The translations under genes and the position numbers were made by a program. From the sequence record MK327931.1: a DNA stretch of 64,000 bases; one strand, written 5' to 3'. This document shows, in pieces, positions 1,255 through 20,933 of the stretch. The stretch's first letter is position 1. The number at the start of each line of letters is the position of its first letter. The notes beneath the pieces are model-generated. The model was given only the letters and a program-made list of their open reading frames with translations. It was not told the DNA's origin and searched no databases.

Positions 1255-1403
1255 TTTGAATCTCCTAACTTTGTGGGCCGTCGCACCATTGCCGCCCTAC
1301 GAGATACATTATTGCAGTACTGATATACTTTGTCAATACTTTTTTTATTAATAGTTTTCACCCCACCAGCAGATAGTTACTCACCGTTATTAACTATATA
1401 TTT

Positions 1404-1487
1404 TAGATACACTCCTGCACCCAGTGGGCTAGTTTTTGTCTATGCGTATATAATAGCAAAGGGACTGACCGGAGTCAATCCCTTTTT
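1404..1487 (-). ncRNA. promoter-driven two-hairpin RNA module, family A copy 1
   Basis: TTGACT-17-TATTAT then TAG-ACAAAAA-CTA, GCCCACTGGGTGCA-GGAG-TGTATCT; no ORF. Confidence 0.6.
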
Positions 1488-1500
1488 TTATTCTTTTTTG

Positions 1501-1701
1501 TTAGATGATTCTCCAATCTTCTACGATCATGGTAAGATAACGGACCATCGATTCAAGTGATTCGAATTCCCGATAGTCTGCCGCTCCACCAGCGGTACAA
1601 GTACAGCCGATTAAACCATTTTGTAATTCCTTAATCTGTACATCGATAAGGTTGGCTTTAGCTTCTTTCAGTACTTCAACCAGGGCGATAGCGATAGACA
1701 T
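1501..1701 (-). CDS. hypothetical early protein (66 aa)
   Basis: GGAG SD; promoter cassette upstream. Confidence 0.8.
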   Translation of the reverse strand: MSIAIALVEVLKEAKANLIDVQIKELQNGLIGCTCTAGGAADYREFESLESMVRYLTMIVEDWRII

Positions 1702-1790
1702 AATGTTTTACTCCAAACTATTGACGGGAGAACTATTCCCCCGCTCTATGTAAAACATTATACATTACTGGTTAGTACTGTCAAATAGTT

Positions 1791-2048
1791 TTATGAAATA
1801 TCTTCGATGTAGTCGGCCCATTTCATTTTTTCAGTACTGTCAATGGCTACCGGATTATTTGGATCAAACCATTCACCATTCCCGCAATACATACCCACGG
1901 CAACGGTTTTATATCCATCCTGTGCAGTACTCCACGACATAGCACGATAGATATGGCCTTTAACTGGTTGCAATACTGGTAATGTTTTATGGTCTTCTAC
2001 GTAGGCCATAGCTTGAGGATTTACCCGATATTGTGTGAACTGTTCCAT
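1791..2048 (-). CDS. hypothetical early protein (85 aa)
   Basis: SD and own promoter. Confidence 0.8.
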   Translation of the reverse strand: MEQFTQYRVNPQAMAYVEDHKTLPVLQPVKGHIYRAMSWSTAQDGYKTVAVGMYCGNGEWFDPNNPVAIDSTEKMKWADYIEDIS

Positions 2049-2124
2049 TATGTTTCCCCTTGTAGTTAGTAAAGTTATTACATCAGTACTATCAAGCTAT
2101 GTCAATAGTACTGAAATAAAACTT

Positions 2125-2349
2125 TTAGATTAGATTATTGATGCCGTTGATGGTAGACTCGCTTTCTTCTTTCTCCCATTGGCGGTAGTACTTCCATGCT
2201 TCATGATATGTGGCGATTAGTTCATCTTTTTGATCCTGAGTACATGCCAGTACTGAATCACGGTGAGCGGTTTTATAGATAGAATCGAATGATTTCTTCT
2301 CTTCTGCCAGGTTAGCTACTTCCCGCATCAGTTCATCAAAGTTAGCCAT
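2125..2349 (-). CDS. hypothetical early protein (74 aa)
   Basis: AAGGAG SD and promoter cassette. Confidence 0.8.
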   Translation of the reverse strand: MANFDELMREVANLAEEKKSFDSIYKTAHRDSVLACTQDQKDELIATYHEAWKYYRQWEKEESESTINGINNLI

Positions 2350-2416
2350 TTTATTACTCCTTTTAGTGGGGGAGGATATCTCCCCCTATGCAAAACATTA
2401 TACTTTGTTTTAGTTA

Positions 2417-2680
2417 TTATGCAAGTACTTTTTTCATATAAAGATTATATTCTACACCGCCGTAACCTTCTACGATGATATGTTTTGCGTTATCACGTTT
2501 GCACATAGTGAAACCGTTGTTGATGTGTTCTGCATTTTCCAGGGCGACATCACCGATAGCGGCACATACGGCACTAATAACAGTATTCCGCAAAGTACTG
2601 GTATCATTAGCGGTCATAGTAGTTTGCAGTACTACGTTGTCGTATACGTGTGCATTGATAGTGATTTCGATAGTGTTCAT
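2417..2680 (-). CDS. hypothetical early protein (87 aa)
   Basis: CAGGAG SD and promoter cassette. Confidence 0.8.
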   Translation of the reverse strand: MNTIEITINAHVYDNVVLQTTMTANDTSTLRNTVISAVCAAIGDVALENAEHINNGFTMCKRDNAKHIIVEGYGGVEYNLYMKKVLA

Positions 2681-2766
2681 GGTGTATCTCCTGGACTGGC
2701 GGGAGAACTATTCCCCCGCTCTATGTAAAACATTATACGTTAATCTAACTACAATGCAAGTACTTT

Positions 2767-2958
2767 TTAAATTTTATTTCCGATATAGTCCGGTCTATTC
2801 TTTTCGGTCATACGCTTTGCTAATGTTTGCATATGGCTTATTGCGTTTAATGTGTCTTCCTCCAGGGATGAATCAACATAATCAGGATCATTCTTCACCT
2901 TGCAATGATTATGATAGCGTAGTACTGCCAGTACTTTTTTAACTTCTTCTACTGTCAT
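2767..2958 (-). CDS. hypothetical early protein (63 aa)
   Basis: ATGA-type coupling with upstream gene. Confidence 0.75.
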   Translation of the reverse strand: MTVEEVKKVLAVLRYHNHCKVKNDPDYVDSSLEEDTLNAISHMQTLAKRMTEKNRPDYIGNKI

Positions 2959-3227
2959 AATAAGTACCCCACTTCGTTAGCTTTCAGGTTAGTATCAATC
3001 ATCAGTGGATTTTTGTAGTTCACAAAACGATTAGTTTTCTCGATAGCGAATCCCATATAATCCAGCTTACTAACAGTACATTCATTCTTAAAAACTTCTT
3101 TCGCTGCATCGATGGCTGATTGCATGGATAACCGACCATCTAAATTAATGTTTCCAAATGATCCACCAGCAGAAGTAGGATTACCGTTCATATCTTTAAT
3201 GATCATAGTAGCGGAGTAGCTGGACAT
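2955..3227 (-). CDS. hypothetical early protein (90 aa)
   Basis: AAGGA SD and promoter cassette. Confidence 0.8.
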   Translation of the reverse strand: MSSYSATMIIKDMNGNPTSAGGSFGNINLDGRLSMQSAIDAAKEVFKNECTVSKLDYMGFAIEKTNRFVNYKNPLMIDTNLKANEVGYLL

Positions 3228-3314
3228 AATTTTGTTTCCTTTTAGTATCGGGGAGAACTATTCTCCCCTTGATGTAAACTATTATACAGTACTGATATAC
3301 TTTGTCAAATACTT

Positions 3315-3722
3315 TTATTCGCCCATATAGATTAAGTTATCATCGCCTACATAGGGATCGCAAACGTTGATTTCTTCGCAGTACTTCGTGAATACATCGC
3401 CATAGTGACCTAAACCACGATCCCAAAAACCAGTTCCGTGACCTTCGCGGGTAAGGAACAGATCATGACCAGCTTGCTCATAACCGTAATCAATAAACAT
3501 ACCGCGAACTACTTCCAGATCATTACCGTGTTTCTCAATGAAGCGAGAACATGCAATCACCGCCGCTTGACGTGCTTCATCAGATAACTCATAATCTTCC
3601 AGGTAATCGCCGTTATCATTATGTACAGTACTGAATTGCATAGCTTCAATGTAAGCTACAACCATTGCAGCATGATTTTTATCGTTAGTGATGTTCCGAG
3701 CGAGATTAGTAGTAGTAGACAT
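3315..3722 (-). CDS. conserved phage hypothetical protein (GHDxxLTRxGHGxGFWDR motif)
   Basis: motif recalled from small phage proteins; own promoter cassette. Confidence 0.8.
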   Translation of the reverse strand: MSTTTNLARNITNDKNHAAMVVAYIEAMQFSTVHNDNGDYLEDYELSDEARQAAVIACSRFIEKHGNDLEVVRGMFIDYGYEQAGHDLFLTREGHGTGFWDRGLGHYGDVFTKYCEEINVCDPYVGDDNLIYMGE

Positions 3723-3805
3723 GATTTTATTCCTTATTGTATTGGGGAGAACTATTCTCCCCTTGATGTAAACTATTATACAGTACTGATATACTTTGTC
3801 AATAC

Positions 3806-4027
3806 TTAATTACGTTTAAAATGATATGTGCCTTTATCATCCTGTACGCCCCACACTGATTTACCATCAACACCAGTGAAACCGGATTGTAATTCAATAT
3901 GGAAACCATTATTATCAACTACAAAAACTTTTTTATTTTCATCCCGATAACATTGATATTCTGAATCAACATTAAAGGCCGCATCATTCAGAAGATTGGA
4001 AGCGTAAATGCAAGTCATTGTAGTCAT
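3806..4027 (-). CDS. hypothetical early protein (73 aa, MTTMTC)
   Basis: start moved to ATG after AAGGA SD. Confidence 0.8.
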   Translation of the reverse strand: MTTMTCIYASNLLNDAAFNVDSEYQCYRDENKKVFVVDNNGFHIELQSGFTGVDGKSVWGVQDDKGTYHFKRN

Positions 4028-4150
4028 GATTTTATTCCTTATTACCAGGGAGAACCATTTCCCCCTCTCTATGTAAAACATTATACTTGATTCTAAGTAC
4101 AATGCAAGTACTTTTTATCAAATAGTTTTCAGTACTGAATACTTATATAA

Positions 4151-4240
4151 TAGATACACTTCCGCACCCTATGGGTCAGTGAGTTATCTCTCAATGAATA
4201 TATAATAGCAAAGGGACTGACCGGAGTCAATCCCTTTTTT
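4151..4240 (-). ncRNA. two-hairpin RNA module, family A copy 2
   Basis: TTGACT-17-TATTAT; TGAG-AGATAA-CTCA; CCCATAGGGTGCG-GAAG-TGTATCT. Confidence 0.6.
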
Positions 4241-4248
4241 AATCTTTT

Positions 4249-4833
4249 TTATCGTGTTACCTTACTTGCTTCTACATCACGCTTTTTATAGTACTGATTC
4301 CAGATATTGCGGGTTAAACCGTAATCAAGTACTTTAATAAGGCCATTACGATCCTGGCCGATATTCTGTTTTCTGATATCTCTTATCGTTAGTGTTGATA
4401 ATGTATCATCAACGTGTTGTAGTGCATCAGCAAAGCGGTGCTGGCGTTCAATGGCATTACGTTTAATATTGTACTTTAATTCATTGCACGCGTTTACGTG
4501 CTTTACACTGCCTTTACTTGCAGTACTCAACCGATCCATAACGATAAACATATTATCAGGATCGCATAAATGCATATGCACCTTTGCAAAGTACTGTTTC
4601 AATTGAGGGCGGTCATAATCTAAAAAATTCCATACCTTACATTCAGTTTCATTTTGTTCTACACCCGCATCACAATTCGCGACCTTGATCACTAACCGAT
4701 CATTTAAAGCGAATACAATACGGGAAGAACCCGCACCGATGATCTCCAGACCAGCTAACCGACAAGCTGAAAGGATCTCTTTGTTGGTTTCCATTTCTGA
4801 CAGGGTACGGATGAATTTAGTATAATTACGCAT
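4249..4833 (-). CDS. Ser/Thr protein kinase-like protein (194 aa)
   Basis: IGAGSSRIVF Gly loop, VIKVA, NETE, DIRKQNIG catalytic loop, LDYG; start after AAGGAG. Confidence 0.75.
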   Translation of the reverse strand: MRNYTKFIRTLSEMETNKEILSACRLAGLEIIGAGSSRIVFALNDRLVIKVANCDAGVEQNETECKVWNFLDYDRPQLKQYFAKVHMHLCDPDNMFIVMDRLSTASKGSVKHVNACNELKYNIKRNAIERQHRFADALQHVDDTLSTLTIRDIRKQNIGQDRNGLIKVLDYGLTRNIWNQYYKKRDVEASKVTR

Positions 4834-4864
4834 TGCATGTTCTCCTTGAGTTAATGAAACTATC

Positions 4865-5107
4865 TTACAGTACTTTACTATCAATGGCAACTACTTTTTT
4901 AACATTAACGGCGTGGATCACCTCCTTAGTGTTTTTAGTACTGAATACTTTCGCCGCCCCATTCACGACCGTGATACGATAGCGACCATTAACATCAACC
5001 ATATTAATAAAGTCCGGCGTGCTGAATGGTGTTGTTTTACATTTGAGTACTGTTAACAATTCCACCAGCGATGTAGTTTCTTTGATACGTTTTTCTAAAG
5101 TAATCAT
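4865..5107 (-). CDS. hypothetical early protein (80 aa)
   Basis: SD; duplicated 60-bp promoter/RBS upstream. Confidence 0.8.
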   Translation of the reverse strand: MITLEKRIKETTSLVELLTVLKCKTTPFSTPDFINMVDVNGRYRITVVNGAAKVFSTKNTKEVIHAVNVKKVVAIDSKVL

Positions 5108-5165
5108 TTTGTTTTTCCCCGTGTTGGTATGTACATATAGTACTAAAACATTTGAGTACTGTCAA

Positions 5166-5384
5166 TTAGATAATATTATATTTCTTAAAATAAAATGCGT
5201 CCTGTGTTGGTTGATACTCAATGCCATTGCCGTTATTGACTTCAACTAATAAACCTTTGTCAATAAGTTTTTTAATAGTACGATACCCTTGTTGAAAATT
5301 GGTAAAATGTGAATCATTACGAAAGGTATAACCGTGCTTAACTGCTTCATCAATAGTTTTCTTTTCGATTTTAGATAATTTCAT
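5166..5384 (-). CDS. hypothetical early protein (72 aa, MKLSKIE)
   Basis: start moved to ATG after GGGAG; same 60-bp promoter/RBS repeat. Confidence 0.8.
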   Translation of the reverse strand: MKLSKIEKKTIDEAVKHGYTFRNDSHFTNFQQGYRTIKKLIDKGLLVEVNNGNGIEYQPTQDAFYFKKYNII

Positions 5385-5437
5385 TTTGTTTCTCCCGTGT
5401 TGGTATATGTACATAGTACTAAAACATTTGAGTACTG

Positions 5438-5692
5438 TCAACGTGATATTAGTTTTATTTTCTTATTATATTGTTGGTGTTCATATAGGTTTATCTTTCC
5501 TGTGTTCTCAATTACTATTCTGTTGTTAGTGTCCACATCGATTACACGCAGTTTCCCGTTGCTTAACTTCCTTGGTAATAGGTTACCATTAATAAACTCA
5601 TTAGCAAGCTGTACGGCCTTTGTGATGATTCTCTTCGGTGCTTTATAGTGTACCCGTAAGATGTTATCTTTATATAGTTGAACCTTAATCAT
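5438..5692 (-). CDS. hypothetical protein, possibly RelE/ParE-like fold (84 aa)
   Basis: pattern KAVQL..F..G...PRKL..G.L...V....RIV......LYEHQQYN resembles a ParE-like family from memory. Confidence 0.6.
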   Translation of the reverse strand: MIKVQLYKDNILRVHYKAPKRIITKAVQLANEFINGNLLPRKLSNGKLRVIDVDTNNRIVIENTGKINLYEHQQYNKKIKLISR

Positions 5693-5753
5693 TTTGTTTG
5701 TCCTATAAAAAAGGCGGGAACTGATCCCGCCGTGTTGTTAGTACTGCAAGTTA

Positions 5754-6149
5754 TTAGATAACCTGGCGGCGTTTACTGAATACTGTTACACGATTACCCT
5801 TACGGTCGTGTCGGATCTCTTTCTGGTTGCGAATCAGTTCACTTGGACGCTTAAGGTTTGCCAGGTGATCCGCGTGAGTCCATGCGGTGTGGTTTACCTG
5901 TACTTTGATATCAGAATCAGCGATAAACTCATCTTGTGCGTCAAGTATTGCCGCCAGCATATCCGCTCGTTTTAGTTCTGCTGCTGTCAGTACTGGCTCA
6001 GGTGAATTCACAATATCAGAGATTTCTTTGAACTGTACGGCCCAGCGTTGACCTTTCGGTGCATCTTTGCCCATGTCTTTAAATGCTGCTCCTTCCTCGC
6101 GTGCAACAATACGGGCAGCTTCACGGGTAGCGTAGAATTTAGTAATCAT
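5754..6149 (-). CDS. hypothetical early protein, paralogue of 17936-18202
   Basis: shares (F/Y)ATRE.AR..AR..GA.FKDMG, G.RWA and DRKGNRVTV. Confidence 0.85.
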   Translation of the reverse strand: MITKFYATREAARIVAREEGAAFKDMGKDAPKGQRWAVQFKEISDIVNSPEPVLTAAELKRADMLAAILDAQDEFIADSDIKVQVNHTAWTHADHLANLKRPSELIRNQKEIRHDRKGNRVTVFSKRRQVI

Positions 6150-6244
6150 GGTATACATCCTATTAGTTGAGATAGTACTACAAGTTAGAGTCTATTATAA
6201 AGTACTATCTGGGCAATGTCAAATAGTACTTTAAATGGATTCTA

Positions 6245-6568
6245 TTACATGTCTTTCTTACGTTTTACATCGTAGTATCGAACTGTAATTTCTTTGTTGA
6301 TCTCTTCCTCGATGCGGTGAATAACTTTTTCTTTCGGGTTGAAACCTATAACGGTTTCTTTAATGATCTCCAAGCCCGTGTATTCGCCTTGTGTACCGTA
6401 ACCGTATGTAAAGGTTTCGTGTCCCAGGTCTTCCCAGCGGTCGCCAATTAACGCTGACACGTAGCAAGAGTGGTAAGTATTGCCGTTCCGATCAGTCCAG
6501 CGATTAACTTTAATGTCAAAGGAGGTTACAATTTTCAGTTCTACTTTCTGGGTAAGGATCATAGCCAT
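6245..6568 (-). CDS. hypothetical early protein, paralogue of 12363-12686
   Basis: shares RWTD..GNTYHSC.VS, E.FTYGY and RKKD. Confidence 0.85.
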   Translation of the reverse strand: MAMILTQKVELKIVTSFDIKVNRWTDRNGNTYHSCYVSALIGDRWEDLGHETFTYGYGTQGEYTGLEIIKETVIGFNPKEKVIHRIEEEINKEITVRYYDVKRKKDM

Positions 6569-6929
6569 TTTTATTTCTCTCTCTTTGTTAGGAGGGGAAC
6601 CATTCCCCTCGCTTGATGTAAACTATTATACAGTACTAAGATACTTTGTCAATACTTATTTTTTGGAAAGTTTACGCATTAATTCTACGCTTTCTTGTGA
6701 ACGTTTTGCTACCTGGCAAGCTGTATGGGCAGTAAACATTTTTGTATAGTCTGACGCTTTGCCACCAAACCGAGCGGCACGTTCACGGGCACTTGGAACT
6801 AATACTATTTCTTTCTTGCAGATAGTGCACTTAGCCATTTTTATTTCTCTCTCTTTGTTAGGAGGGGAACCGTTTCCCCTCACTTGATGTAAACTATTAT
6901 ACAGTACTAAGATACTTTATCAATACTTA
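6563..6929. repeat. about 95-bp near-identical direct repeats (6563-6657, 6833-6929) flanking one gene
   Basis: agccattttt(t)atttctctctctttgttaggaggggaacc...gatgtaaactattatacagtactaagatacttt in both. Confidence 0.9.
6656..6838 (-). CDS. small putative Zn-binding protein (60 aa; CxxC...HxxC)
   Basis: MAKCTIC...AHTACQ; start after GAGAG SD. Confidence 0.75.
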   Translation of the reverse strand: MAKCTICKKEIVLVPSARERAARFGGKASDYTKMFTAHTACQVAKRSQESVELMRKLSKK

Positions 6930-7202
6930 AGTATTGTAAATGTCGTGAATAGTGATAAAGTTTTTACGACCGTAAACCTGCAAATCAATATCAATGTAGT
7001 GCTTATCTAGTACATCCTCGACGCTTAACGCGGTGTCGTGGATATCTTCGTAGAATTGAGGATCTACAATCTTGCTTAAGTCATCCGGCGTTAACTTATC
7101 GTTAAGCCATTGAACCGCCTGGATATCTGCTTCACGTTTCCAGTCTTCCAGGTTAGTAGTCAGTACTTGTTCGATTTCGTTAGCTGTCAGTAGAATCCGC
7201 AT
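6927..7202 (-). CDS. hypothetical acidic early protein (91 aa)
   Basis: AAGGA SD and promoter. Confidence 0.8.
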   Translation of the reverse strand: MRILLTANEIEQVLTTNLEDWKREADIQAVQWLNDKLTPDDLSKIVDPQFYEDIHDTALSVEDVLDKHYIDIDLQVYGRKNFITIHDIYNT

Positions 7203-7271
7203 TTTTATGTTTCCTTATCAGTGGTTGATGTAAGTATTATACTCGTTTACTTTCTATTGTCAAACTATTTT

Positions 7272-7379
7272 ATCAGGGGAGTTTTTCGTATGTCTTACTC
7301 CTGGACTACTTAACAGGGTTACTTATTTCGTTCCCCGTCCTGATGTAAAACATTATACTTGATTCTAAGTACAATGCAA
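7272..7379 (-). ncRNA. promoter-driven 73-nt structured RNA, family B copy 1
   Basis: TTGCAT-17-TATAAT; ATCAGG..CCTGAT ends; GGAGT-AAGACATACGAAAA-ACTCC; no start codon. Confidence 0.6.
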
Positions 7380-7424
7380 GTACTTTTTTAAAAATAGTTT
7401 TCAGTACTAGCCACCAGCAAACAA

Positions 7425-7508
7425 TAGATACATTTATGCACCCTGTGGGCTGATTTGTTTCTATGCGTATATAATAGCAAAGGGACTGACCGGAGTCAAT
7501 CCCTTTTT
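7425..7508 (-). ncRNA. two-hairpin RNA module, family A copy 3
   Basis: TTGACT-17-TATTAT; GCCCACAGGGTGCA-TAAA-TGTATCT. Confidence 0.6.
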
Positions 7509-7517
7509 CAAATATTT

Positions 7518-7926: not shown

Positions 7927-7943
7927 AAGCTGTACTCCTTATA

Positions 7944-14352: not shown

Positions 14353-14405
14353 CTACTTTTTTAAAACTATTTTTAAAGTATCTCAGTACTACGATACTAC
14401 AAAAA

Positions 14406-14447
14406 CAAAAAAGCCCACTGTTTAAGGTGGGCTAGTGATTCAGTACT
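14406..14447 (-). terminator. intrinsic terminator, identical to 13670-13711
   Basis: exact 42-bp duplicate. Confidence 0.85.
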
Positions 14448-14450
14448 AGA

Positions 14451-14750
14451 TTATAAACAGTTAATTACTCCGGTGTGCGTTACTTTCTCAGTATCCATAA
14501 CCGTGACCGATCCACGCTTAGTACTGGCATCATAATAAATTGTGGTGCTACCGTTTTCGTCTTCTTCATGGAACGGGCCGTTTTTAAATGCTTCCGGCTG
14601 GATCTCTAAATCCTTTAATACAATCTCGCCAGTTCTTTCATCGGTCATTGCAACAGTGCACTGAATGAATTTTTCATTACTTACATCTAATGACGCATTA
14701 ACAGCGAAAGAGGAAACAGATAAAGCCAGGGCGATGATTGCAATTTTCAT
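14451..14750 (-). CDS. putative exported protein (99 aa)
   Basis: signal peptide MKIAIIALALSVSSFAVNA. Confidence 0.8.
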   Translation of the reverse strand: MKIAIIALALSVSSFAVNASLDVSNEKFIQCTVAMTDERTGEIVLKDLEIQPEAFKNGPFHEEDENGSTTIYYDASTKRGSVTVMDTEKVTHTGVINCL

Positions 14751-14834
14751 TTGATTATCCTTAGTTACCAGGGGGAACCGCTCCCCCTTGCTATGTAAAA
14801 TATTATACAGTACTAAAAACTAATTGCAAGTACT

Positions 14835-15071
14835 TTATGATTTTTTATAAAACATTTCGGCAGTGATATTTTTACCCGTTGGCTGTACTTTATCCAGAAT
14901 TTTTTGATGCCCTGGCCGTCCAAATGAATATGATCCGTAAACCGTAAACCAGTAGTTACCCTCAGTGTTTACATGTACAGCACAATAGGGAACGCCCCGC
15001 GATTCATCACTAGTAAAGTGTGCTACCGTTCCCGTTACATTCGAAGTCGTTGATTTGATTTGTTCAAGCAT
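14835..15071 (-). CDS. hypothetical early protein (78 aa)
   Basis: AAGGA SD; promoter cassette. Confidence 0.8.
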   Translation of the reverse strand: MLEQIKSTTSNVTGTVAHFTSDESRGVPYCAVHVNTEGNYWFTVYGSYSFGRPGHQKILDKVQPTGKNITAEMFYKKS

Positions 15072-15178
15072 TTTCTTATTCCTTAGTTACCAGGGGAACC
15101 GCTCCCCTATGCAAAACATTATACGCGTTTAAAAACTAATAGCAAGTATTTTAATAAAAAGTATTTGGAAAATAATTG

Positions 15179-15260
15179 TTGACAAGTGCATCCAGTACTG
15201 GCATAATTACTACATCAAGACGAAACAGTCACTAACCCACCGGGTGCATAGATCCGTCTA
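15179..15260 (+). ncRNA. two-hairpin RNA module, family A copy 5 (plus strand)
   Basis: TTGACA-17-CATAAT; GAC-GAAACA-GTC; CCCACCGGGTGCA-TAGA-TCCGTCT; no ORF downstream. Confidence 0.55.
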
Positions 15261-15313
15261 TTAAATGATTCAGTACTGAAAAAGTAACGGGGAGTTATTA
15301 TCTCCCCGCGTTG

Positions 15314-15535
15314 TTATTTTGTAAGGTATAAACAGAAGTCACCTTTATTTGCTACGCCGCCAGTGTAACGCGATGAATAGTTAGAAATATCTTGTACTTC
15401 TGCTATTACCAGTGTATCATCATTCATTTCGTCGCAGAAGCAAACGGCTGGATCTTTTACGCCGATATTGTCGGCATGTTCCCGCATAGATTTAACCAGT
15501 GCTTCCAGTTGAGAAAGAGTAGTGATATTAGCCAT
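15314..15535 (-). CDS. hypothetical early protein (73 aa)
   Basis: start moved to ATG after GAGGA. Confidence 0.8.
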   Translation of the reverse strand: MANITTLSQLEALVKSMREHADNIGVKDPAVCFCDEMNDDTLVIAEVQDISNYSSRYTGGVANKGDFCLYLTK

Positions 15536-15621
15536 TGTATTTTCCTCATTACCAGGGAGAACCATTTCTCCCCTCTATGTAAACTATTATACAGTACTGA
15601 AAACTAATTGCAAGTACTTTT

Positions 15622-15825
15622 TTAATTTAATTGCTTTAAAACATACTCAAAGACACCACGCACATCATTGATCATCGCCTGGCGGTTAGCAGGTAACGCA
15701 TCAGGATCGCCACTATCCCAGGCATTGATAAAACTCCCCAAATCATGATAGATTTTATTCTGTAAGCCGATTAACTGTAATTCTTTTTCTTCAAGCTCTT
15801 TGATGCGGTCGATTAAATCACTCAT
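15622..15825 (-). CDS. hypothetical early protein (67 aa)
   Basis: start moved to ATG after ACTGAGGATTATCTA, the same leader as the upstream gene. Confidence 0.75.
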   Translation of the reverse strand: MSDLIDRIKELEEKELQLIGLQNKIYHDLGSFINAWDSGDPDALPANRQAMINDVRGVFEYVLKQLN

Positions 15826-15842
15826 TAGATAATCCTCAGTAC

Positions 15843-16127
15843 TTAACTGTAAGATCCGCAACGGTCGCAGTAGTGCCCGTCCTCGTCATCGTCAACGAAT
15901 TGACCGACGAAATGATCTACTTTCGCTTTCAGGTTATTATAATCGTTTTCTACTTCATTTAAACGCTTCTGGTAGTATTCCAGTGCTTTAAGATATGCCG
16001 CATCAGCAGTTTTCTCCTGCATAGCTAAATTCATGCCACGCGTTTCATCGTACAGCCAAAAACCATCGGTGCACTGGCTAATAGATAATGACTTGCTTAG
16101 TACTGTATAGTTAATTACTTTACCCAT
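15843..16127 (-). CDS. hypothetical protein, coiled coil plus C-terminal CxxC (94 aa)
   Basis: GAGGA SD; YCDRCG end. Confidence 0.8.
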   Translation of the reverse strand: MGKVINYTVLSKSLSISQCTDGFWLYDETRGMNLAMQEKTADAAYLKALEYYQKRLNEVENDYNNLKAKVDHFVGQFVDDDEDGHYCDRCGSYS

Positions 16128-16219
16128 TAGATAATCCTCAGTAAAGGCGGGAACTATTCCCCGCCTCGATATAAAGTATTATACGTTAATCTAACTACAA
16201 TGCAAGTACTTTTTAAATT

Positions 16220-16486
16220 TTATAATCCTTTTACTGCATCAGGTGCGACTACTCCATCAATGTATTGAACATCGTTTTCAACTTCACGGGCGGCATCATT
16301 CAGCAGATCAAAATTAAATTCCATTTCTTCCAGATCATCGAAATCAGGCTCATAACCATTAATTGTTGAATAAGTCCAAGTACCTTTTTCATAAGTTACG
16401 ACACTTACATCAGGGAAGAAATCTTGCACATGATCCATCGCATCCCGAACCAATTGATGTGCAGTTGTGATATTTAAAGTTTTCAT
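16220..16486 (-). CDS. hypothetical acidic early protein (88 aa)
   Basis: promoter cassette; D/E rich. Confidence 0.8.
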   Translation of the reverse strand: MKTLNITTAHQLVRDAMDHVQDFFPDVSVVTYEKGTWTYSTINGYEPDFDDLEEMEFNFDLLNDAAREVENDVQYIDGVVAPDAVKGL

Positions 16487-16579
16487 TTTGTTGCCCTTTT
16501 AGTGTGAGCGGGGAACCACTCCCCGCCTCGATGTAAAGTATTATACGCTTTTAAACTTAGTTTGCAAGTACTTTTTAAA

Positions 16580-17191
16580 TTAATATGCGATTGATTCTAC
16601 TACGTCATCAATAACATTGAATTGATATTCGTTACCCTCAATCAGTGCCGTAATGTTTTCAGTAGTGAATTGATCCTCATATGCATTCTCTAAATCACGG
16701 TACAACTTGCGGGATAATTCACGAATAGTTTCAGTGAGTAGTTCCTCAAGCTCATTAACTAACGTTTCTTGTTTTGCGGTTAAATCAGTGTAAGCCGATT
16801 CAATGTACCCGCTTACAGTATTCTCATGCGAGTAGTGGGAGTGAGAACGCTTTACACTCATCGCCAAATCATCTTCATTCAGCAGGTGACGGATTGAGCG
16901 ATACTTAGTTAATGCTCTTACCTTGCGTAAAAACTTCACTGCGTCAACGTGGTCAGTACTGATTGATGCACCGTCACCCTGGGACCAAAAACCACTGAAT
17001 TGTATTTCAGCTTCATTAATGCCATATTCCGGTAGTACTGTTTCTTTATAGTATTCAATTTCACTTTCAGAAAAATAATTGTCGTTTGAGTTTTTTTCAC
17101 GTTCCCGAACCAGTTCGATAGCTGACGTTTTTTGTTCTGCGTTCAATTCAGAAAAATCCATAACGAAAGTAGTAGTAGTGATAGTTTTCAT
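16580..17191 (-). CDS. conserved phage hypothetical acidic protein (203 aa; FSGFWSQGDGA motif)
   Basis: ORF track; GAGG SD; own promoter. Confidence 0.85.
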   Translation of the reverse strand: MKTITTTTFVMDFSELNAEQKTSAIELVREREKNSNDNYFSESEIEYYKETVLPEYGINEAEIQFSGFWSQGDGASISTDHVDAVKFLRKVRALTKYRSIRHLLNEDDLAMSVKRSHSHYSHENTVSGYIESAYTDLTAKQETLVNELEELLTETIRELSRKLYRDLENAYEDQFTTENITALIEGNEYQFNVIDDVVESIAY

Positions 17192-17259
17192 TTTGTAACC
17201 CTCATTCAGTAGTTGATGTAAGTATTATACGCTTTTAAAAACATTTGTCAAACTATTTT

Positions 17260-17369
17260 ATCAGGGGAGTTTTTCGTGTGCCTTACTCCTGGGCTACTTA
17301 ACGGGAAGTTACTTATTTCGTTCCCCGTCCTGATGTAAAACATTATACGCCTTTAAACATAGTTTGCAA
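17260..17369 (-). ncRNA. promoter-driven 75-nt structured RNA, family B copy 2
   Basis: near-identical to 7272-7346; TAAC/GTTA stem with variable loop; GGAGT-AAGGCACACGAAAA-ACTCC. Confidence 0.6.
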
Positions 17370-17414
17370 GTACTTTTTAAAAATAGTTTTCAGTACTGAA
17401 TATTTAAAAAAGTA

Positions 17415-17488
17415 TTGACAGCATTATCAAGTACTGGCATAATATACCCCATGACAACAGCTAACCCACCGGGTGCACAATTGTAACT
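17415..17488 (+). ncRNA. two-hairpin RNA module, family A copy 6 (plus strand)
   Basis: TTGACA-17-CATAAT; CCCACCGGGTGCA-CAAT-TGTAACT. Confidence 0.55.
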
Positions 17489-17508
17489 ATACTAAACTAC
17501 TTTTTCTA

Positions 17509-17587
17509 TAGATACACTCCCGCACCCTATGGGCTACGGCTTATCTGCCAATGAATACATTATGCCAGTACTGACAAAATAAGTCAA
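17509..17587 (-). ncRNA. two-hairpin RNA module, family A copy 7, convergent with copy 6
   Basis: TTGACT-17-CATAAT; GGC-AGATAA-GCC; GCCCATAGGGTGCG-GGAG-TGTATCT. Confidence 0.6.
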
Positions 17588-17617
17588 TACCGGCAATTGT
17601 AAAGATTTGTAAACTGC

Positions 17618-17848
17618 TTATACTGCAATCGCGTCCAGGCTATAATAATAATAAGTGCCGTATTGGTGTACTTTATTACCTTTTATTTCAGTACTGAATG
17701 AATCCGAACGGTTTGCATATGATGTTAATTTAAAGTACTTTGATTTGCTGATACGTTGCCATACACCGCAGATCCGCTGTAAGTAAGTAGTTTTATTCGT
17801 GGTAGTATCTTTTACAGTTTTAACTTCAGTCATATACATATTAGTCAT
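17618..17848 (-). CDS. hypothetical early protein (76 aa)
   Basis: GGAG SD; promoter cassette. Confidence 0.8.
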   Translation of the reverse strand: MTNMYMTEVKTVKDTTTNKTTYLQRICGVWQRISKSKYFKLTSYANRSDSFSTEIKGNKVHQYGTYYYYSLDAIAV

Positions 17849-17935
17849 TTTTATTACTCCAGGTTATAGGCGGGAAGAGTTCCCGCTCTCGATGTAAAAC
17901 ATTATACGCCATTAAACATAGTTTGCAAGTACTTT

Positions 17936-18202
17936 TTATTCAAGTACTGCAATCTTTTTAGTACGGTACACGGTCACGCGGTTGCCCTTTCGGTCGAGCT
18001 TTATTTCTACCACTCGACGCGATACACTATCAGGACTTTTCAACGCCGCTAACCAGTACTGTAATGATCTGGCGGTACTACGCTTTATAATGGCCCAACG
18101 TTTACCACGTTCCGATTGTACGCCCATATCTTTAAACGTTGCCCCGTCCTGGCGTGCGGCGATCCGAGCTTGTTCACGCGTCGCAAAATACTTAATATTC
18201 AT
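17936..18202 (-). CDS. hypothetical early protein, paralogue of 5754-6149
   Basis: shared motifs; start at MNIKYF. Confidence 0.8.
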   Translation of the reverse strand: MNIKYFATREQARIAARQDGATFKDMGVQSERGKRWAIIKRSTARSLQYWLAALKSPDSVSRRVVEIKLDRKGNRVTVYRTKKIAVLE

Positions 18203-18287
18203 GCTGTTGCCCTTATCGTTGGTGTATGAATAAAACACTATTATAAAGTACTATCGCAAAAAATGATAGTACTTTAAATAAATTCTA

Positions 18288-18527
18288 TTACATTCCAACC
18301 ATTGCAGCACGGATCGCAGTAGTGCTATATTTGAATCCGTCCGGCGTTTTATCTTGTCCAGTCTGTTCTAAAAATAACATCATATGACGGGCCGCATCAT
18401 TACGATTAGTATTGGCGGCAATAAAGTCCTGGGCCAACCGGTATAATGATTCATCGTTATTAATCCAAAGGCTTACATTCCAATGAGTTTTGTTTTTGTG
18501 ACCTAAGAACATTTTTGATTTAGCCAT
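18288..18527 (-). CDS. conserved phage hypothetical protein (79 aa; THWNVSLWINND motif)
   Basis: start moved to ATG after GAGGA. Confidence 0.8.
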   Translation of the reverse strand: MAKSKMFLGHKNKTHWNVSLWINNDESLYRLAQDFIAANTNRNDAARHMMLFLEQTGQDKTPDGFKYSTTAIRAAMVGM

Positions 18528-18620
18528 TTTTTTAATCCTCTTATATAGTGGGGAACTATTCCCCACCTGATGTAAAACATTATACGCTTTTAAACATAGT
18601 TTGCAAGTACTTTATTAAAC

Positions 18621-18983
18621 TTATTCGTAAATTTTGCCACTGTCAGCCCATACCAGGAAACGAGGCATATTATCCCATGCATCTTGTTTTAAATTTAAAC
18701 CGTGTAATACTTCTGTACTTTCCATTCCTGGTACTGGTTTACTATACACCGCGAAATTTTCGCCCATATACTGATAAACCATCGTCAAATCACTGGCGAT
18801 CATCTTATGGATCATCGCATCAAGCATCACGGTAGCGGCGTATTGTTCACGCTTAAGCGGCAACATTGTAATAAGTTCCCGATAAGCTGAAATGTGAATT
18901 TTTACCGTTTCAGCCGGAAGACCTTTCATCTCTTCACGGAAGTTGACCAGGTTAGAAATAATTTTATTGATTTGGGTCGCCAT
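18621..18983 (-). CDS. hypothetical early protein (120 aa)
   Basis: start moved to MATQIN; first promoter cassette of the zone at 19007-19072. Confidence 0.75.
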   Translation of the reverse strand: MATQINKIISNLVNFREEMKGLPAETVKIHISAYRELITMLPLKREQYAATVMLDAMIHKMIASDLTMVYQYMGENFAVYSKPVPGMESTEVLHGLNLKQDAWDNMPRFLVWADSGKIYE

Positions 18984-19302
18984 CGTATTAATCTCTTTTA
19001 AAGTGTAGCGGGAAGTGTTCCCGCTCTCGATGTAAAACATTATACGCCTTTAAACATAGTTTGCAAGTACTTTCTACATGTACTTTTAAAATAGTTTTCT
19101 TTCTATATAGGGGAACTATCATTCAGTACTATTATTCAGTACTGAATCAACCAAATCACTACTACACCCCATAAAACGGCCTCAGACGCATTCTAACGCA
19201 TTAATACACCTAAGCTATACATTTGCACCATTCCAATCATTCCAGGGCTTTACGGGCCGTTTAAACGCGTTAAATTATTTTCAATTATTTTGTTTTTAGC
19301 TA

Positions 19303-19382
19303 TTGACTCAGTACAGAAAAAGCGTATAATTACTACATAGACGCGAGAAAGCGGAAACCCCAGAGGGTGCGGAATTACGCCC
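19303..19382 (+). ncRNA. two-hairpin RNA module, family A copy 8
   Basis: TTGACT-16-TATAAT; CGC-GAGAAA-GCG; CCCAGAGGGTGCG-GAAT-TACGCCC. Confidence 0.55.
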
Positions 19383-19402
19383 AAAATTCAAGATATAAAA
19401 AA

Positions 19403-19485
19403 AGGATACACTCCCGCACCCTAGCAGGTAAACGCACTTTCTCAGTACTGAAATATAGTACCATAGTCCGGCCCAGGATAGCAAG
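19403..19485 (-). ncRNA. degenerate family A copy 9, convergent with copy 8
   Basis: GGGTGCG-GGAG-TGTATCC hairpin; weak promoter upstream. Confidence 0.4.
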
Positions 19486-19518
19486 CAAATTAATTAAAAC
19501 TTTTTTGCTTCCAGGGTA

Positions 19519-19598
19519 TTGCTTTATTTTTTCAGTACTGTATAATAGTTCCATCAAGTCGAGAAAGACTCAAGCCCACCGGGTGCATAGTTACGCCC
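19519..19598 (+). ncRNA. two-hairpin RNA module, family A copy 10
   Basis: TTGCTT-16-TATAAT; GTC-GAGAAA-GAC; GCCCACCGGGTGCA-TAGT-TACGCCC. Confidence 0.55.
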
Positions 19599-19643
19599 AA
19601 AATTCAGTACTGAAAAAATTTTTAAAAATATCCGTCCAGGCCG

Positions 19644-19675
19644 TTGACATTGCCCCCAGTTTATAAGATAATGAT
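19644..19675 (+). promoter_or_regulatory. rightward sigma70 promoter with no downstream ORF
   Basis: TTGACA-17-GATAAT. Confidence 0.6.
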
Positions 19676-19769
19676 TCCAGATTCAGAAAAATCTAACTCC
19701 AGATACTGCGGGGAAACTATCCCCACGCGGTAGGGGAACTATTGGAAAAAACAAAATAAAATTTTGATT

Positions 19770-19897
19770 TAGCCGTCTATACTTCCAGACGTGTAACCAT
19801 CTAGCCGTTTAGCCGTCCAAACGTCTAGCCATCCAGAAATCTAGCCGTCTAGATGGATAGCCATCTTTACTTCCAGACTTCTGGAGGGCTAGACATA
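19770..19897. repeat. degenerate 8-bp-period tandem array (TAGCCRTC / CARACGTC units)
   Basis: TAGCCRT at 19770, 19802, 19810, 19826, 19842, 19858, all multiples of 8 apart. Confidence 0.85.
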
Positions 19898-20933
19898 TCT
19901 ACGCCCAAAATCCATCCAGGGTAACTACACCCAAAATCCGTCAGTACTATACCATAGATCTATCTTTTGAAAGGGAGTATTCAGTACTGCCATCATAGCC
20001 CTCACTATGTTACCCTAGGAGGATGAAGACCATCATGTAGTACTGAATACTGTTAGAGGGAATCCACCAGCACAAGCTGGTGGTATAATGCTTTAGATTA
20101 AAATCAGTACTGACACCATTCTGTTAATATCAGTACTGTTATTACGATTTTCATATGAGGTTCAAAAAGATGTACCACCACAGGAGGAACTATCTTTTCT
20201 GTACTGTCTCACGACAGGAGGTAGAGTAAATGAATTGTTCGCAGCAACTCATCACCCCTTGAAGCTATGTAGAACATTATACAGTACTGAATCATAATGT
20301 CAATAGCTTTCTTTCATTATTCAGTACTGATATTCTTGAGAACTACCCGACTACAAACATCATTATATCCCACAAATCATAAACGTCCCAACGTAAATTT
20401 CAACTTTCGAAGATCCAACTTTTATTTCATAGGTACTCCAAAATTTTTAGGATCGAGATTTAGGATGGAGTACTAACCAACTTTTTGCTGGAGCCTCAAG
20501 GGGTAATTGAATTTTACCCCGAAGGGTAAAAGGGTAATTGTAATTAAGGTGAAAGTAATAATTCAGTACTAATCATTGCGTGATTACTTTTGATTACATT
20601 TGATGTAATTTGCAAAATGGAAAAGGAGCTTGGAAACTACAAAGTACGGCAGACTTCCTCTGCCTACTTAGTGGCATATCAGTACTGAATCATTCACACA
20701 CATTTCCGTGCATTCTTGTCTATACTAATCAGTACTGAATCATATATAATCATTCTGTGATTCTACGGTGCTCATATAAATGTTTATATATGATTACTTA
20801 TGACTACCTATGATTACGGGGTTTAGCCTGGGGAGAATCCTAGTGATCGCATTTGTCCAGGCTGAATTTTAACATATGCAACATATGTTAAAGCCTGTAT
20901 AATGCTTCCACTACGGAGCTTCCCCTAGCTATA

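What the first reader, a model, noticed from the sequence alone, without database searches (positions are those of the whole stretch)
1363..20083. Polarised block of Chi sites ending in an inverted Chi pair
Seen: GCTGGTGG occurs on the minus strand at 1363, 1586, 3163, 5062, 7411, 8679, 9392, 13594 and 20064, five of them intergenic. On the plus strand it occurs only at 20076, where it forms a CCACCAGC-acaa-GCTGGTGG hairpin with the last minus copy. About 0.1 copy is expected in 20 kb. In the other 44 kb I found only three (33987 and 34245 in Gly codons, and 48848). Established: RecBCD responds to Chi only when approaching from its 3' side, and Chi limits degradation and CRISPR spacer acquisition. 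Inference: these sites face a DNA end to the left of the window and the 20076 site faces an end to its right. That fits a lytic phage mimicking host self-marks across a terminal repeat of about 20 kb.
Basis: partly seen in the sequence, partly recalled or inferred. Interest (0 to 1): 0.72.

Follow-up and report, generated by a model that had tools for sequence, protein, structure and literature searches.

The report
Chi sites packed into phage terminal repeat
The 20.7-kb repeat at each end of a giant E. coli virus, and of its relatives on other bacteria, is packed with the short DNA word that tames the host's DNA-end-chewing enzyme RecBCD, mostly pointing at one chromosome end, which suggests the virus uses the host's own repair signal to save or join its ends.

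Summary
The window is bases 1-64000 of Escherichia jumbo phage vB_EcoM_G17. Bases 1-20668 are its direct terminal repeat (DTR), so window base 1 is a physical genome end. The DTR holds 10 Chi octamers (9 on the gene strand, 1 opposite), against 19 in the remaining 329 kb. About 0.1-0.3 are expected on the gene strand. The nine face the end at base 1. The tenth, in the hairpin, faces the other DTR boundary 585 bp away.

Chi is the only over-represented 8-mer there that is not part of a promoter or AGTACT motif. The same DTR-confined, gene-strand-biased excess occurs, mostly at non-homologous positions, in related phages of Klebsiella, Salmonella, Pectobacterium, Serratia and Xanthomonas. Pooled over six of these, it is 61 Chi in 134 kb of DTR against 21 in 419 kb outside. 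It is absent from the Pseudomonas relative PA5oct and from T5's repeat.

The best reading is that these are cis-acting RecBCD control sites. They would stop end degradation inside the redundant repeat and load RecA for repeat-to-repeat recombination. That function is inferred, not shown. Chi clustering near phage ends is known for P1 and LLS-type lambdoid phages. I found no report of it for virulent jumbo phages. I rate it a new variant of a known kind.

The parts
1..20668 (.). Direct terminal repeat (DTR) of phage G17. Base 1 is the physical genome end toward which all 53 DTR genes are transcribed (the 'D-end'). Base 20668 is the other boundary (the 'P-end'), which is the physical right end in the second copy.
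   Evidence: An exact second copy lies at 350150-370817. PhageTerm gave 20,668 bp for the identical phage Sharanji. The boundary homolog reproduces the published DTR lengths of vB_Ec-M-J and fEgEco12. G17's authors saw about 20 kb of terminal redundancy from coverage.
1363..1370 (-). Chi, intergenic, the first site met by RecBCD entering at base 1. It lies about 27 bp upstream of a -35 TTGACA.
   Evidence: intact in 4 of 4 close relatives
1586..1593 (-). Chi inside CDS 1501-1701, read as Ala-Gly-Gly
   Evidence: intact in 3 relatives, locus deleted in BF17
3163..3170 (-). Chi inside CDS 2955-3227, read as Ala-Gly-Gly
5062..5069 (-). Chi inside CDS 4865-5107, in the Leu-Val frame
7411..7418 (-). 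Chi, intergenic, upstream of an early promoter
8679..8686 (-). Chi inside CDS 8591-8779, read as Ala-Gly-Gly
9392..9399 (-). Chi, intergenic, forming part of a predicted terminator stem (9390-9413)
13594..13601 (-). Chi, intergenic. In four relatives it is paired with an opposite-strand Chi about 55 bp away.
13644..13651 (+). Degenerate Chi (GCTAGTGG) at the position where four relatives carry an intact plus-strand Chi
20064..20071 (-). Chi, left arm of the hairpin. It is the last gene-strand site before the inner DTR boundary.
20076..20083 (+). Chi, right arm of the hairpin. It is the only G17 site facing the P-end, 585 bp from the boundary.
   Evidence: the pair is conserved about 580 bp from the physical end in four Asteriusvirus relatives and at 484/496 in Salmonella phage Munch
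19041..20668 (.). Non-coding leader next to the P-end. It contains the Chi hairpin, iteron-like (T)AGCC(G/A)TC repeats at about 19770-19875, and two plus-strand sigma70-like promoters.
   Evidence: no Rfam match

Best explanation
The Chi octamers are cis-acting control sites for the host's RecBCD enzyme, placed in the one part of the linear virion DNA that is present twice. This is the proposed mechanism. RecBCD loads on a free double-strand end and degrades inward. On meeting a correctly oriented Chi it stops destroying the strand that ends 3' at Chi and loads RecA on it. Every such Chi lies inside the DTR, so the loss is limited to redundant sequence. The RecA-coated 3' end also has a homologous partner, the other DTR copy, on the same or a sister molecule. 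Invasion there would restore the end. It would also give circular, lariat or concatemeric forms that can start recombination-dependent replication before the phage's own recombination proteins exist. Nine G17 sites serve the end at window base 1, and one (20076) serves the other end.

Shown: the DTR and its ends; the enrichment; its specificity for the exact octamer; its confinement to the DTR; its polarity; and its independent recurrence in related phages. Established knowledge: the orientation rule and the RecBCD-Chi-RecA reaction. Inferred: that RecBCD acts on these sites during infection, and that the benefit is end rescue and repeat-to-repeat recombination.
For: The G17 DTR has 10 Chi in 20,668 bp (1 per 2.07 kb), denser than the E. 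coli chromosome's 1 per 4.6 kb (figure from PMC12315714). The other 329,481 bp have 19.

Chi ranks 20th of all 8-mers on the DTR gene strand. All 19 above it are slices of promoter, leader or AGTACT motifs, and the ten Chi contexts are unrelated to each other.

Across five genomes, exact Chi occurs 41 times on DTR gene strands, against 4 or fewer for each of its 24 one-mismatch neighbours. Among the 168 permutations of its letters no other word exceeds 2 per DTR.

The same pattern occurs in Klebsiella Muenster (7+1, all inside the PhageTerm repeat 1-20030, none in the next 25 kb) and Salmonella Munch (11+2). It also occurs in Pectobacterium CBB (7+2 inside the annotated 22,456-bp repeat) and Xanthomonas XbC2 (7+2 inside 17,581 bp). 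Xanthomonas XaC1 has 9+3 inside 32,031 bp and none in the next 18 kb. Serratia BF has 6+0.

Pooled over six lineages, there are 61 sites in 134 kb of DTR against 21 in 419 kb outside (P about 1e-36). Polarity is 50:11 against a 66.5% composition-matched expectation (P = 0.006), and against 10:11 outside (P = 0.004).

Between genera most sites lie in non-homologous sequence. Where the flanks do align, the other genus usually lacks Chi.

The Pseudomonas relative PA5oct has similar GC and a 39-kb DTR of early genes, but no GCTGGTGG in 50 kb.

The physical ends are supported experimentally in relatives. The orientation rule is as stated in PMC12315714. P1 and LLS-type phages are precedents for Chi clustered at packaged ends.
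Against: No experiment bears on RecBCD in these phages.

Polarity is confounded with transcription direction, because all DTR genes point the same way.

G17 encodes its own UvsX-like recombinase, gp46/47-like nuclease, RecD-like helicase and Cas4-like nuclease. The 'no recombination module, hence Chi' logic of LLS phages therefore does not apply.

The sites show no preference for A or purine at +4 to +7, the context that strengthens Chi (PMC5041463).

Only 0-3 sites per genome face the P-end, and Serratia BF has none.

PA5oct shows no excess of the proposed Pseudomonas octamer GCTGGCGC, so the strategy is not universal in the clade.

The two Xanthomonas phages carry the enteric octamer, but I do not know what Xanthomonas RecBCD recognises.

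Conservation among close relatives is only weakly informative: 9 of 10 sites against a 53% background, P = 0.018.
Confidence: 0.6

Rival explanations
1. Self-mark mimicry aimed at CRISPR adaptation. Chi near the ends limits the RecBCD degradation products from which Cas1-Cas2 takes spacers, so the phage is sampled less.
For: The geometry is the same as for the best explanation. It follows from the reported link between Chi and spacer acquisition, discussed in PMC5041463.
Against: It is a consequence of the same RecBCD-Chi event, not a separate mechanism. It does not explain why the sites are confined to the duplicated segment rather than simply lying near the ends. The 'Chi as self-mark' idea is contested. 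From my own knowledge, the type I-E system of E. coli K-12 is normally repressed. Nothing here tests it.
Confidence: 0.12
2. Replication-linked Chi, as on the bacterial chromosome. The sites are co-oriented with fork movement through the DTR, for example from an origin in the non-coding leader. RecBCD entering at a collapsed fork would then be stopped and the fork rebuilt.
For: The polarity equals the direction of transcription, which is commonly also the direction of replication. Iteron-like repeats lie in the leader. The E. coli chromosome has a roughly threefold Chi orientation bias of this kind.
Against: The other 329 kb of G17 is also mostly minus-strand genes, yet it has 10:9 Chi and a tenfold lower density. 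Confinement to the repeat is not predicted. No origin has been mapped.
Confidence: 0.1
3. The octamer is a signal unrelated to RecBCD. It could be a binding site for a phage or host protein, or an RNA-level element on early transcripts, that happens to coincide with Chi.
For: There is strict gene-strand bias in seven lineages. There is an unexplained excess of A at +1 (33 of 61). There is no optimisation of the RecBCD-relevant 3' flank. The octamer is present in phages isolated on Xanthomonas.
Against: The word is exactly the RecBCD recognition octamer, with none of its 24 neighbours enriched. It is absent from the Pseudomonas relative. 11 of 61 sites lie on the other strand, several of them close to the P-end (215-585 bp in three genomes). 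About 40% of G17's sites are in coding sequence, with no fixed spacing to promoters. The Smith laboratory states that it knows of no function for the octamer other than with RecBCD.
Confidence: 0.08
4. There is no function. The excess is a by-product of base composition, codon use, G-rich coding strands, a longer repeat, or shared ancestry.
For: The DTR is a little more GC-rich than the rest of the genome (0.384 against 0.338) and its gene strand is G-rich (skew +0.09). Three of the four coding sites use the Ala-Gly-Gly frame.
Against: Markov models up to order 4, composition-matched permutations and one-mismatch neighbours all fail to reproduce it. Six of ten G17 sites are intergenic, although 67% of the DTR is coding. 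The contexts are unrelated. Sites are non-orthologous between genera.
Confidence: 0.03

Closest known systems
Phage P1 and relatives (P7, D6): about 50 Chi concentrated in and near the terminally redundant ends (Subramaniam and Smith, bioRxiv 2021.07.08.451572)
   Same: Chi density is above that of the host and is concentrated where packaged DNA ends fall. The proposed role is RecBCD/RecA-mediated recombination between terminal repeats to circularise injected DNA.
   Different: P1 is temperate and packages by headful from a pac site, so its ends are spread over 20-40 kb and Chi is abundant on both strands. Here the phages are virulent jumbo myoviruses with fixed ends and an exact 17-32 kb DTR. 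The sites stop at the DTR boundary and about 80% share one orientation. RecBCD dependence is shown for P1 but not here.
LLS-class lambdoid phages (and Pseudomonas phage MD8) with many Chi near the right cos end (Genome Res 2025, PMC12315714)
   Same: There are many Chi, with a strong bias toward the orientation that is active for RecBCD entering at one end, clustered near that end.
   Different: The LLS class lacks a phage recombination module and grows better with RecBCD. G17 encodes UvsX-like, gp46/47-like, RecD-like and Cas4-like proteins. Those phages are about 40-60 kb cos phages without long repeats.
Chi orientation bias on the E. coli chromosome
   Same: It is the same octamer with the same orientation logic relative to the end at which RecBCD enters.
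   Different: On the chromosome the bias is genome-wide, about threefold, and tied to replication direction. In G17 it is restricted to 5.6% of the genome (the DTR), and the rest shows no bias (10:9).
Phage T5 terminal repeat (first-step-transfer DNA with pre-early genes)
   Same: Both have a long exact DTR (10,219 bp in T5) carrying host-takeover genes read by host RNA polymerase. T5's pre-early genes dmp, A1 and A2, like the G17 DTR genes, are transcribed toward the physical end. PhageTerm classes these jumbo-phage ends as T5-type.
   Different: The T5 repeat has only two Chi, both facing away from the first-entering left end. No first-step transfer is known for the jumbo phages.
Protein-based evasion of RecBCD (lambda Gam, T7 gp5.9, P22 Abc2, T4 gp2 end protector)
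   Same: The problem being solved is the same: linear phage DNA ends are substrates for RecBCD (PMC9836394 listed; T4 gp2 from my own knowledge).
   Different: Those are trans-acting proteins that block or redirect the enzyme. Here the device would be cis-acting DNA that needs no gene expression. I found no homolog of those proteins, but my search was limited to 16 proteins.

Membership tests
Chi (crossover hotspot instigator) sites of enteric RecBCD | Exact octamer 5'-GCTGGTGG-3' | tested here: met
   There are ten exact copies in the DTR. None of the 24 one-mismatch neighbours is enriched.
Chi (crossover hotspot instigator) sites of enteric RecBCD | Orientation such that RecBCD entering at a real double-strand end approaches from the 3' side | tested here: met
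   The nine minus-strand sites face the physical end at base 1. The plus-strand site faces the other DTR boundary 585 bp away. The rule is as stated in PMC12315714. The ends are supported.
Chi (crossover hotspot instigator) sites of enteric RecBCD | The host enzyme recognises this octamer | tested here: inconclusive
   This is established for E. coli and other enteric bacteria (literature cited). It is unknown to me for Xanthomonas, the host of XbC2 and XaC1. The Pseudomonas relative lacks the octamer.
Chi (crossover hotspot instigator) sites of enteric RecBCD | Hotspot activity: RecBCD nicking at the site, nuclease attenuation, RecA loading | not testable with these tools
   This needs genetics or biochemistry.
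Chi (crossover hotspot instigator) sites of enteric RecBCD | Activity-enhancing 3' flank (A or G at +4 to +7) | tested here: not met
   A is 0.316 and purine 0.520 at +4 to +7, against backgrounds of 0.328 and 0.528. Only 1 of 61 sites has a best tetramer. This is a modifier of strength, not a requirement for Chi.
Chi-enriched phage genomes (P1 type / LLS type) | Chi density above the host's and concentrated at packaged ends | tested here: met
   Density is 1 per 2.07 kb in the DTR, against 1 per 4.6 kb in E. coli and 1 per 17 kb in the rest of G17.
Chi-enriched phage genomes (P1 type / LLS type) | Orientation bias toward the exposed end | tested here: met
   The ratio is 9:1 in G17 and 50:11 pooled.
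Chi-enriched phage genomes (P1 type / LLS type) | Absence of a phage-encoded recombination module (LLS class) | tested here: not met
   The G17 annotation lists a RecA/UvsX-like recombinase, SbcCD/gp46-47-like subunits, a RecD-like helicase and a Cas4-like nuclease.
Chi-enriched phage genomes (P1 type / LLS type) | Growth depends on or is enhanced by RecBCD and Chi recognition | not testable with these tools
   No data were found in the literature searched.
Long direct terminal repeat of RaK2/PBECO4-like jumbo phages | The same sequence at both ends of the virion DNA, with fixed boundaries | tested here: met
   The 20,668 bp are identical at both ends of the record. PhageTerm, restriction digests and coverage support this in G17, Sharanji and fEgEco12. 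The boundary is homologous across relatives.
Long direct terminal repeat of RaK2/PBECO4-like jumbo phages | A co-directional block of small early genes read by host RNA polymerase | tested here: inconclusive
   There are ten perfect 12/12 sigma70 consensus promoters, all on the gene strand. RNA-seq shows early DTR transcription only in the relative PA5oct.
Intrinsic terminator (as the record annotates 20064-20083) | GC-rich stem-loop | tested here: met
   It has an 8-bp stem and a 4-nt loop, at -15.1 kcal/mol.
Intrinsic terminator (as the record annotates 20064-20083) | A run of T (U) immediately after the stem | tested here: not met
   The tails are TATAATGCTT on the plus strand and ATTCCCTCTA on the minus strand. 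No gene ends nearby.

The most novel reading that the evidence does not exclude
In a whole clade of virulent jumbo phages (Asteriusvirus, Alcyoneusvirus, Mimasvirus, Eneladusvirus, and Munch- and XaC1-like phages), the long terminal repeat is a Chi-loaded 'recombination handle'. Under this reading the phage recruits host RecBCD and RecA, without expressing any gene, to rescue its ends and to launch circularisation or recombination-dependent replication. DTR-specific octamer enrichment would then report the host's Chi. That predicts that Xanthomonas RecBCD recognises GCTGGTGG.
Probability: 0.3. Interest if true: 0.75.

Novelty: new variant of a known kind. Interest (0 to 1): 0.62.

Why it matters
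If the sites are functional, these phages answer RecBCD, one of the most general barriers to linear foreign DNA, with a signal written in the DNA itself. That signal would work the moment the end enters the cell, before any anti-defence protein can be made. It would also give the 17-39 kb terminal repeats of jumbo phages a role, which has so far only been guessed at ('probably circularises'). It offers a simple genetic handle: plating on rec mutants, and Chi-free repeats. It extends the idea that phages select for Chi from temperate P1 and lambdoid phages to large virulent phages that carry their own recombination machinery. For phage therapy candidates of this genus, it predicts a dependence on the host's rec genotype. 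The Xanthomonas cases give a testable prediction about Chi recognition outside the enteric bacteria.

Tried and rejected
1. A longer repeat containing Chi was rejected. The ten contexts are unrelated.

2. A composition, codon or strand-skew artefact was rejected by Markov models, 168 letter permutations and 24 one-mismatch neighbours.

3. Xanthomonas phage XbC2 was chosen as a negative control, and the control failed. It has 7+2 Chi in its DTR, only 3 shared with its relative CBB. The more distant XaC1 also has 9+3. I now count both as positive cases of unexplained host logic.

4. Pseudomonas PA5oct served as the working negative control for the enteric octamer. It did not show the reciprocal excess of GCTGGCGC.

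5. T5's terminal repeat does not share the pattern.

6. The 3'-flank context test gave no signal.

7. Conservation among close Asteriusvirus relatives is only weakly informative at 95% identity (P = 0.018).

8. The hairpin as an intrinsic terminator: there is no T-run on either side.

9. PHROG scans of ten DTR proteins and six virion-module proteins found no RecBCD inhibitor or gp2-like end protector. This was not a whole-proteome search.

10. Rfam found nothing in the leader.

11. A scan of IMG/VR for the inverted-Chi hairpin gave 46 contigs, mostly unrelated and roughly twice my rough chance estimate, so it was uninformative.

12. Literature searches found no paper that links Chi to these phages.

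Full report
**What the window is.** Bases 1-22000 match the start of the GenBank record of Escherichia phage vB_EcoM_G17 at 100% identity (MK327931.1, 370,817 bp, genus Asteriusvirus, a virulent jumbo myovirus). They match phage Sharanji equally well. I fetched the rest of the record in pieces. Bases 1-20668 recur without a single mismatch at 350150-370817, the very end of the record. This is a direct terminal repeat (DTR). G17's authors reported about 20 kb of terminal redundancy from read coverage (PMC6563267). PhageTerm gave exactly 20,668 bp for Sharanji (PMC11895373). For the relative fEgEco12, PhageTerm gave a 20,993-bp DTR that was confirmed by restriction digests (PMC13070987). The homolog of window base 1 in vB_Ec-M-J and fEgEco12 reproduces their published DTR lengths, 21,525 and 20,993 bp. 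Window base 1 is therefore a physical genome end, not an arbitrary start.

**The observation.** All ten Chi positions in 1363-20083 are exact. The hairpin CCACCAGC-acaa-GCTGGTGG is present.

**Whole-genome census.** The DTR has 9 minus-strand and 1 plus-strand Chi. The 329,481-bp unique part has 10 minus and 9 plus. Density is 1 per 2.07 kb in the DTR and 1 per 17 kb elsewhere. In E. coli it is 1 per 4.6 kb (figure from PMC12315714). Markov models of order 0-4 predict 0.11-0.33 copies on the DTR gene strand. At the density of the unique part, P(10 or more) = 5e-7.

**Is it really Chi that is enriched?** On the DTR gene strand Chi ranks 20th of all 8-mers by Markov-Poisson P. The 19 words above it are overlapping slices of three longer motifs:
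- the early-promoter -35 region (AAAGTACTTGCA or TATTGACA);
- the -10 and leader region (TGTATAATGTTTTACATCAAGGGGAGA);
- the palindrome CAGTACTG.

The ten Chi contexts share nothing else. Among the 168 permutations of Chi's letters, which control for composition and strand skew, no other word exceeds 2 copies per DTR. Across five genomes the exact octamer occurs 41 times on DTR gene strands, and each of its 24 one-mismatch neighbours occurs 4 times or fewer. Six of the ten G17 sites are intergenic, although 67% of the DTR is coding.

**Geometry.** All 53 annotated DTR genes are on the minus strand. Ten perfect 12/12 sigma70 consensus promoters lie on that strand. I call the boundary toward which the genes are read the D-end (window base 1). 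I call the boundary next to the 1.6-kb non-coding leader (19041-20668) the P-end. In virion DNA the left terminus is a D-end and the right terminus is a P-end. RecBCD recognises 5'-GCTGGTGG-3' only when it approaches from the 3' side, that is, on the strand that ends 3' at the entry end (PMC12315714). So the nine minus-strand sites are active for an enzyme entering at base 1, and the first is met after 1,362 bp. The plus-strand site at 20076 is active for an enzyme entering at the P-end, 585 bp away.

**Close relatives.** vB_Ec-M-J, fEgEco12, BAU.Micro_ELP-22 and BF17 are about 95% identical to G17 in the DTR.
- They carry 8-10 gene-strand and 2 opposite-strand Chi in the DTR, and none in the 5-6 kb of adjoining unique DNA.
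- All nine G17 gene-strand sites are orthologous and intact wherever the locus exists.
- The inverted pair sits about 580 bp from the physical end in all of them.
- A second opposite-strand Chi in the four relatives is GCTAGTGG in G17, at 13644.
- At this divergence 53% of ordinary 8-mers are also invariant, so conservation alone is weak evidence (9 of 10 sites, P = 0.018).

**Distant relatives.** These are the stronger test. The non-coding leader and a DTR protein led me to other genera. With genes on the plus strand and the P-end first, the counts are gene strand / opposite strand:

| Phage (host) | Chi in DTR | DTR | Outside the DTR |
|---|---|---|---|
| Muenster (Klebsiella) | 7/1 | 20,030 bp, PhageTerm | 0 in the next 25 kb |
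| Munch (Salmonella) | 11/2 | first ~21 kb, not determined | 0 in the next 19 kb |
| CBB (Pectobacterium) | 7/2 | 22,456 bp, annotated repeat | 1 in 13.5 kb |
| XbC2 (Xanthomonas) | 7/2 | 17,581 bp, PhageTerm | 1 in 14.4 kb |
| XaC1 (Xanthomonas) | 9/3 | 32,031 bp, PhageTerm | 0 in 18 kb |
| BF (Serratia) | 6/0 | terminal small-gene block, not determined | 1 in the next 25 kb |

Munch also has an inverted pair at 484/496. In each of Muenster, Munch and CBB, Chi is the most frequent GC-rich 8-mer on the DTR gene strand, and in G17 it ties for first.

Pooled over six lineages (BF not included), there are 61 Chi in 134 kb of DTR and 21 in 419 kb outside (Poisson P about 1e-36). Polarity is 50:11. 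The composition-matched expectation is 66.5% on the gene strand (P = 0.006), and the ratio outside the DTR is 10:11 (Fisher P = 0.004).

DTRs of different genera share little DNA similarity. Most Chi sites lie in non-homologous sequence, and where the flanks align the other genus usually has no Chi. Only the terminal pair (G17 and Munch) and three CBB/XbC2 sites are shared. The sites are therefore kept or gained independently, with the same polarity.

**Controls.** I chose XbC2 as a negative control because of its host, and it was not negative. XaC1, from a different genus, is positive too. I do not know which octamer Xanthomonas RecBCD recognises. One paper notes that a Xanthomonas genome is rich in GCTGGTGG. 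XbC2 was tested only on Xanthomonas strains and is close to Cronobacter phage GAP32. The Pseudomonas relative PA5oct has a 39,080-bp DTR whose genes are early by RNA-seq (PMC7318152). It has no GCTGGTGG in 50 kb. It has only one copy of the proposed Pseudomonas octamer GCTGGCGC in its DTR and one more in the flank. Phage T5's 10,219-bp repeat has two Chi, both facing away from the first-entering left end. The pattern is therefore not a general property of long repeats.

**Mechanism.** Confinement to the DTR is the most telling feature. The DTR is the only segment of an infecting monomer that is redundant and has a homologous partner. A RecBCD molecule entering at either terminus would, on recognising Chi, stop degrading the 3'-ended strand and load RecA (established biochemistry). 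The resulting 3' end lies in repeat sequence and can invade the other copy. Extension from there runs into unique DNA. That restores the end and gives a circular, lariat or concatemeric replication intermediate. This is the role proposed for Chi in P1. It also matches the circularisation that the fEgEco12 authors assumed without knowing of the Chi sites. It would work before any phage gene is expressed. That may explain why phages that encode their own recombinase still carry the sites. All of this is inference.

I cannot say why about 80% of sites serve the D-end. By analogy with T5, where the pre-early genes dmp, A1 and A2 are transcribed toward the first-entering end, the D-end might enter first. 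That is analogy only. Polarity is also confounded with transcription direction.

**Points against, or neutral.**
- The 3' flank that strengthens Chi (A or G at +4 to +7; PMC5041463) is not enriched.
- Serratia BF has no P-end-facing site.
- PA5oct lacks any equivalent enrichment.
- Ten DTR proteins are of unknown function, apart from a DksA-like zinc-finger protein. Six virion-module proteins I tried are not gp2-like.
- The hairpin is annotated as a terminator but has no T-run on either side. It matches no Rfam family.

**Comparison with what is known.** Chi clustered and oriented at packaged ends is described for P1 and its relatives, and for LLS-class lambdoid phages. The present case differs in four ways:
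- the lifestyle is virulent, and these are jumbo phages;
- the ends are fixed, with an exact 17-32 kb repeat;
- the sites are strictly confined to that repeat;
- a phage recombination module is present.

Full-text searches found no paper that mentions Chi together with G17, PBECO4, 121Q, RaK2, GAP32 or CBB, and none linking Chi, RecBCD and jumbo phages in this sense. The DTR itself is already published.

**Verdict.**
- It is a new variant of a known kind.
- Confidence is about 0.6 that the sites act through RecBCD at the repeat. It is lower for any specific sub-model.

Noticed in passing
window, genome-wide; e.g. 19131-19150, 20041-20050, 20105-20112: Words centred on AGTACT are the most over-represented 8-mers. 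CAGTACTG occurs 33 times in the DTR and 166 times in the unique part of G17. AGTACTTG and AAAGTACT occur 20-40 times per DTR in four genera. Part of this is the -35 region of early promoters (AAAGTACTTGCA) and part is a free palindrome. The function is unknown.
   Followed up: partly
window 1458-1485, 4210-4237, 7479-7506 (variant at 10767-10794), minus strand: An identical 28-nt hairpin, AAAGGGATTGACTCCGGTCAGTCCCTTT, is followed by GCTATTATAT. The stem contains a TTGACT and the tail a TATTAT, so it looks like a repeated terminator-promoter cassette between early genes (annotated as -13.0 terminators).
   Followed up: no
window about 19770-19875: At least six iteron-like copies of (T)AGCC(G/A)TC lie in the non-coding leader next to the P-end. 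They may be protein-binding repeats for an origin or for packaging.
   Followed up: no
window 19303-19330 and 19644-19672, plus strand: Two near-consensus sigma70-like promoters in the leader point toward the Chi hairpin, opposite to all DTR genes. They may drive a non-coding RNA, as reported for the DTR of PA5oct. There is no Rfam match.
   Followed up: partly
window 1-1362; L013, L015, L016, L019 at the D-end of each DTR: The Chi nearest the D-end lies 1,089-1,429 bp from it in all five genomes with a defined DTR: G17 1362, Muenster 1089, CBB 1429, XbC2 1213, XaC1 1249. This is tighter than random placement would give, but I noticed it post hoc.
   Followed up: no
61 Chi sites in six DTRs (window, L013-L016, L019): The base after the octamer is A at 33 of 61 sites (GCTGGTGG-A). 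No other flank position stands out.
   Followed up: no
They look like codon-repeat by-products rather than placed sites.
   Followed up: no
window 20934-24101 and G17 344158-350052 (L009, L003): On both sides of the DTR there are long tandem runs of about 60-85-codon genes, often overlapping by a few bases. They look like paralog arrays.
   Followed up: no
L018 (PA5oct 1-50000): The Pseudomonas relative has neither the enteric Chi nor an excess of GCTGGCGC in its 39-kb DTR. Its most frequent GC-rich gene-strand 8-mers (GCAAGCAG, CGGCAGCA, CGGCAAGG, each 6 on the gene strand and 0-1 opposite) are strand-specific and unexplained.
   Followed up: no
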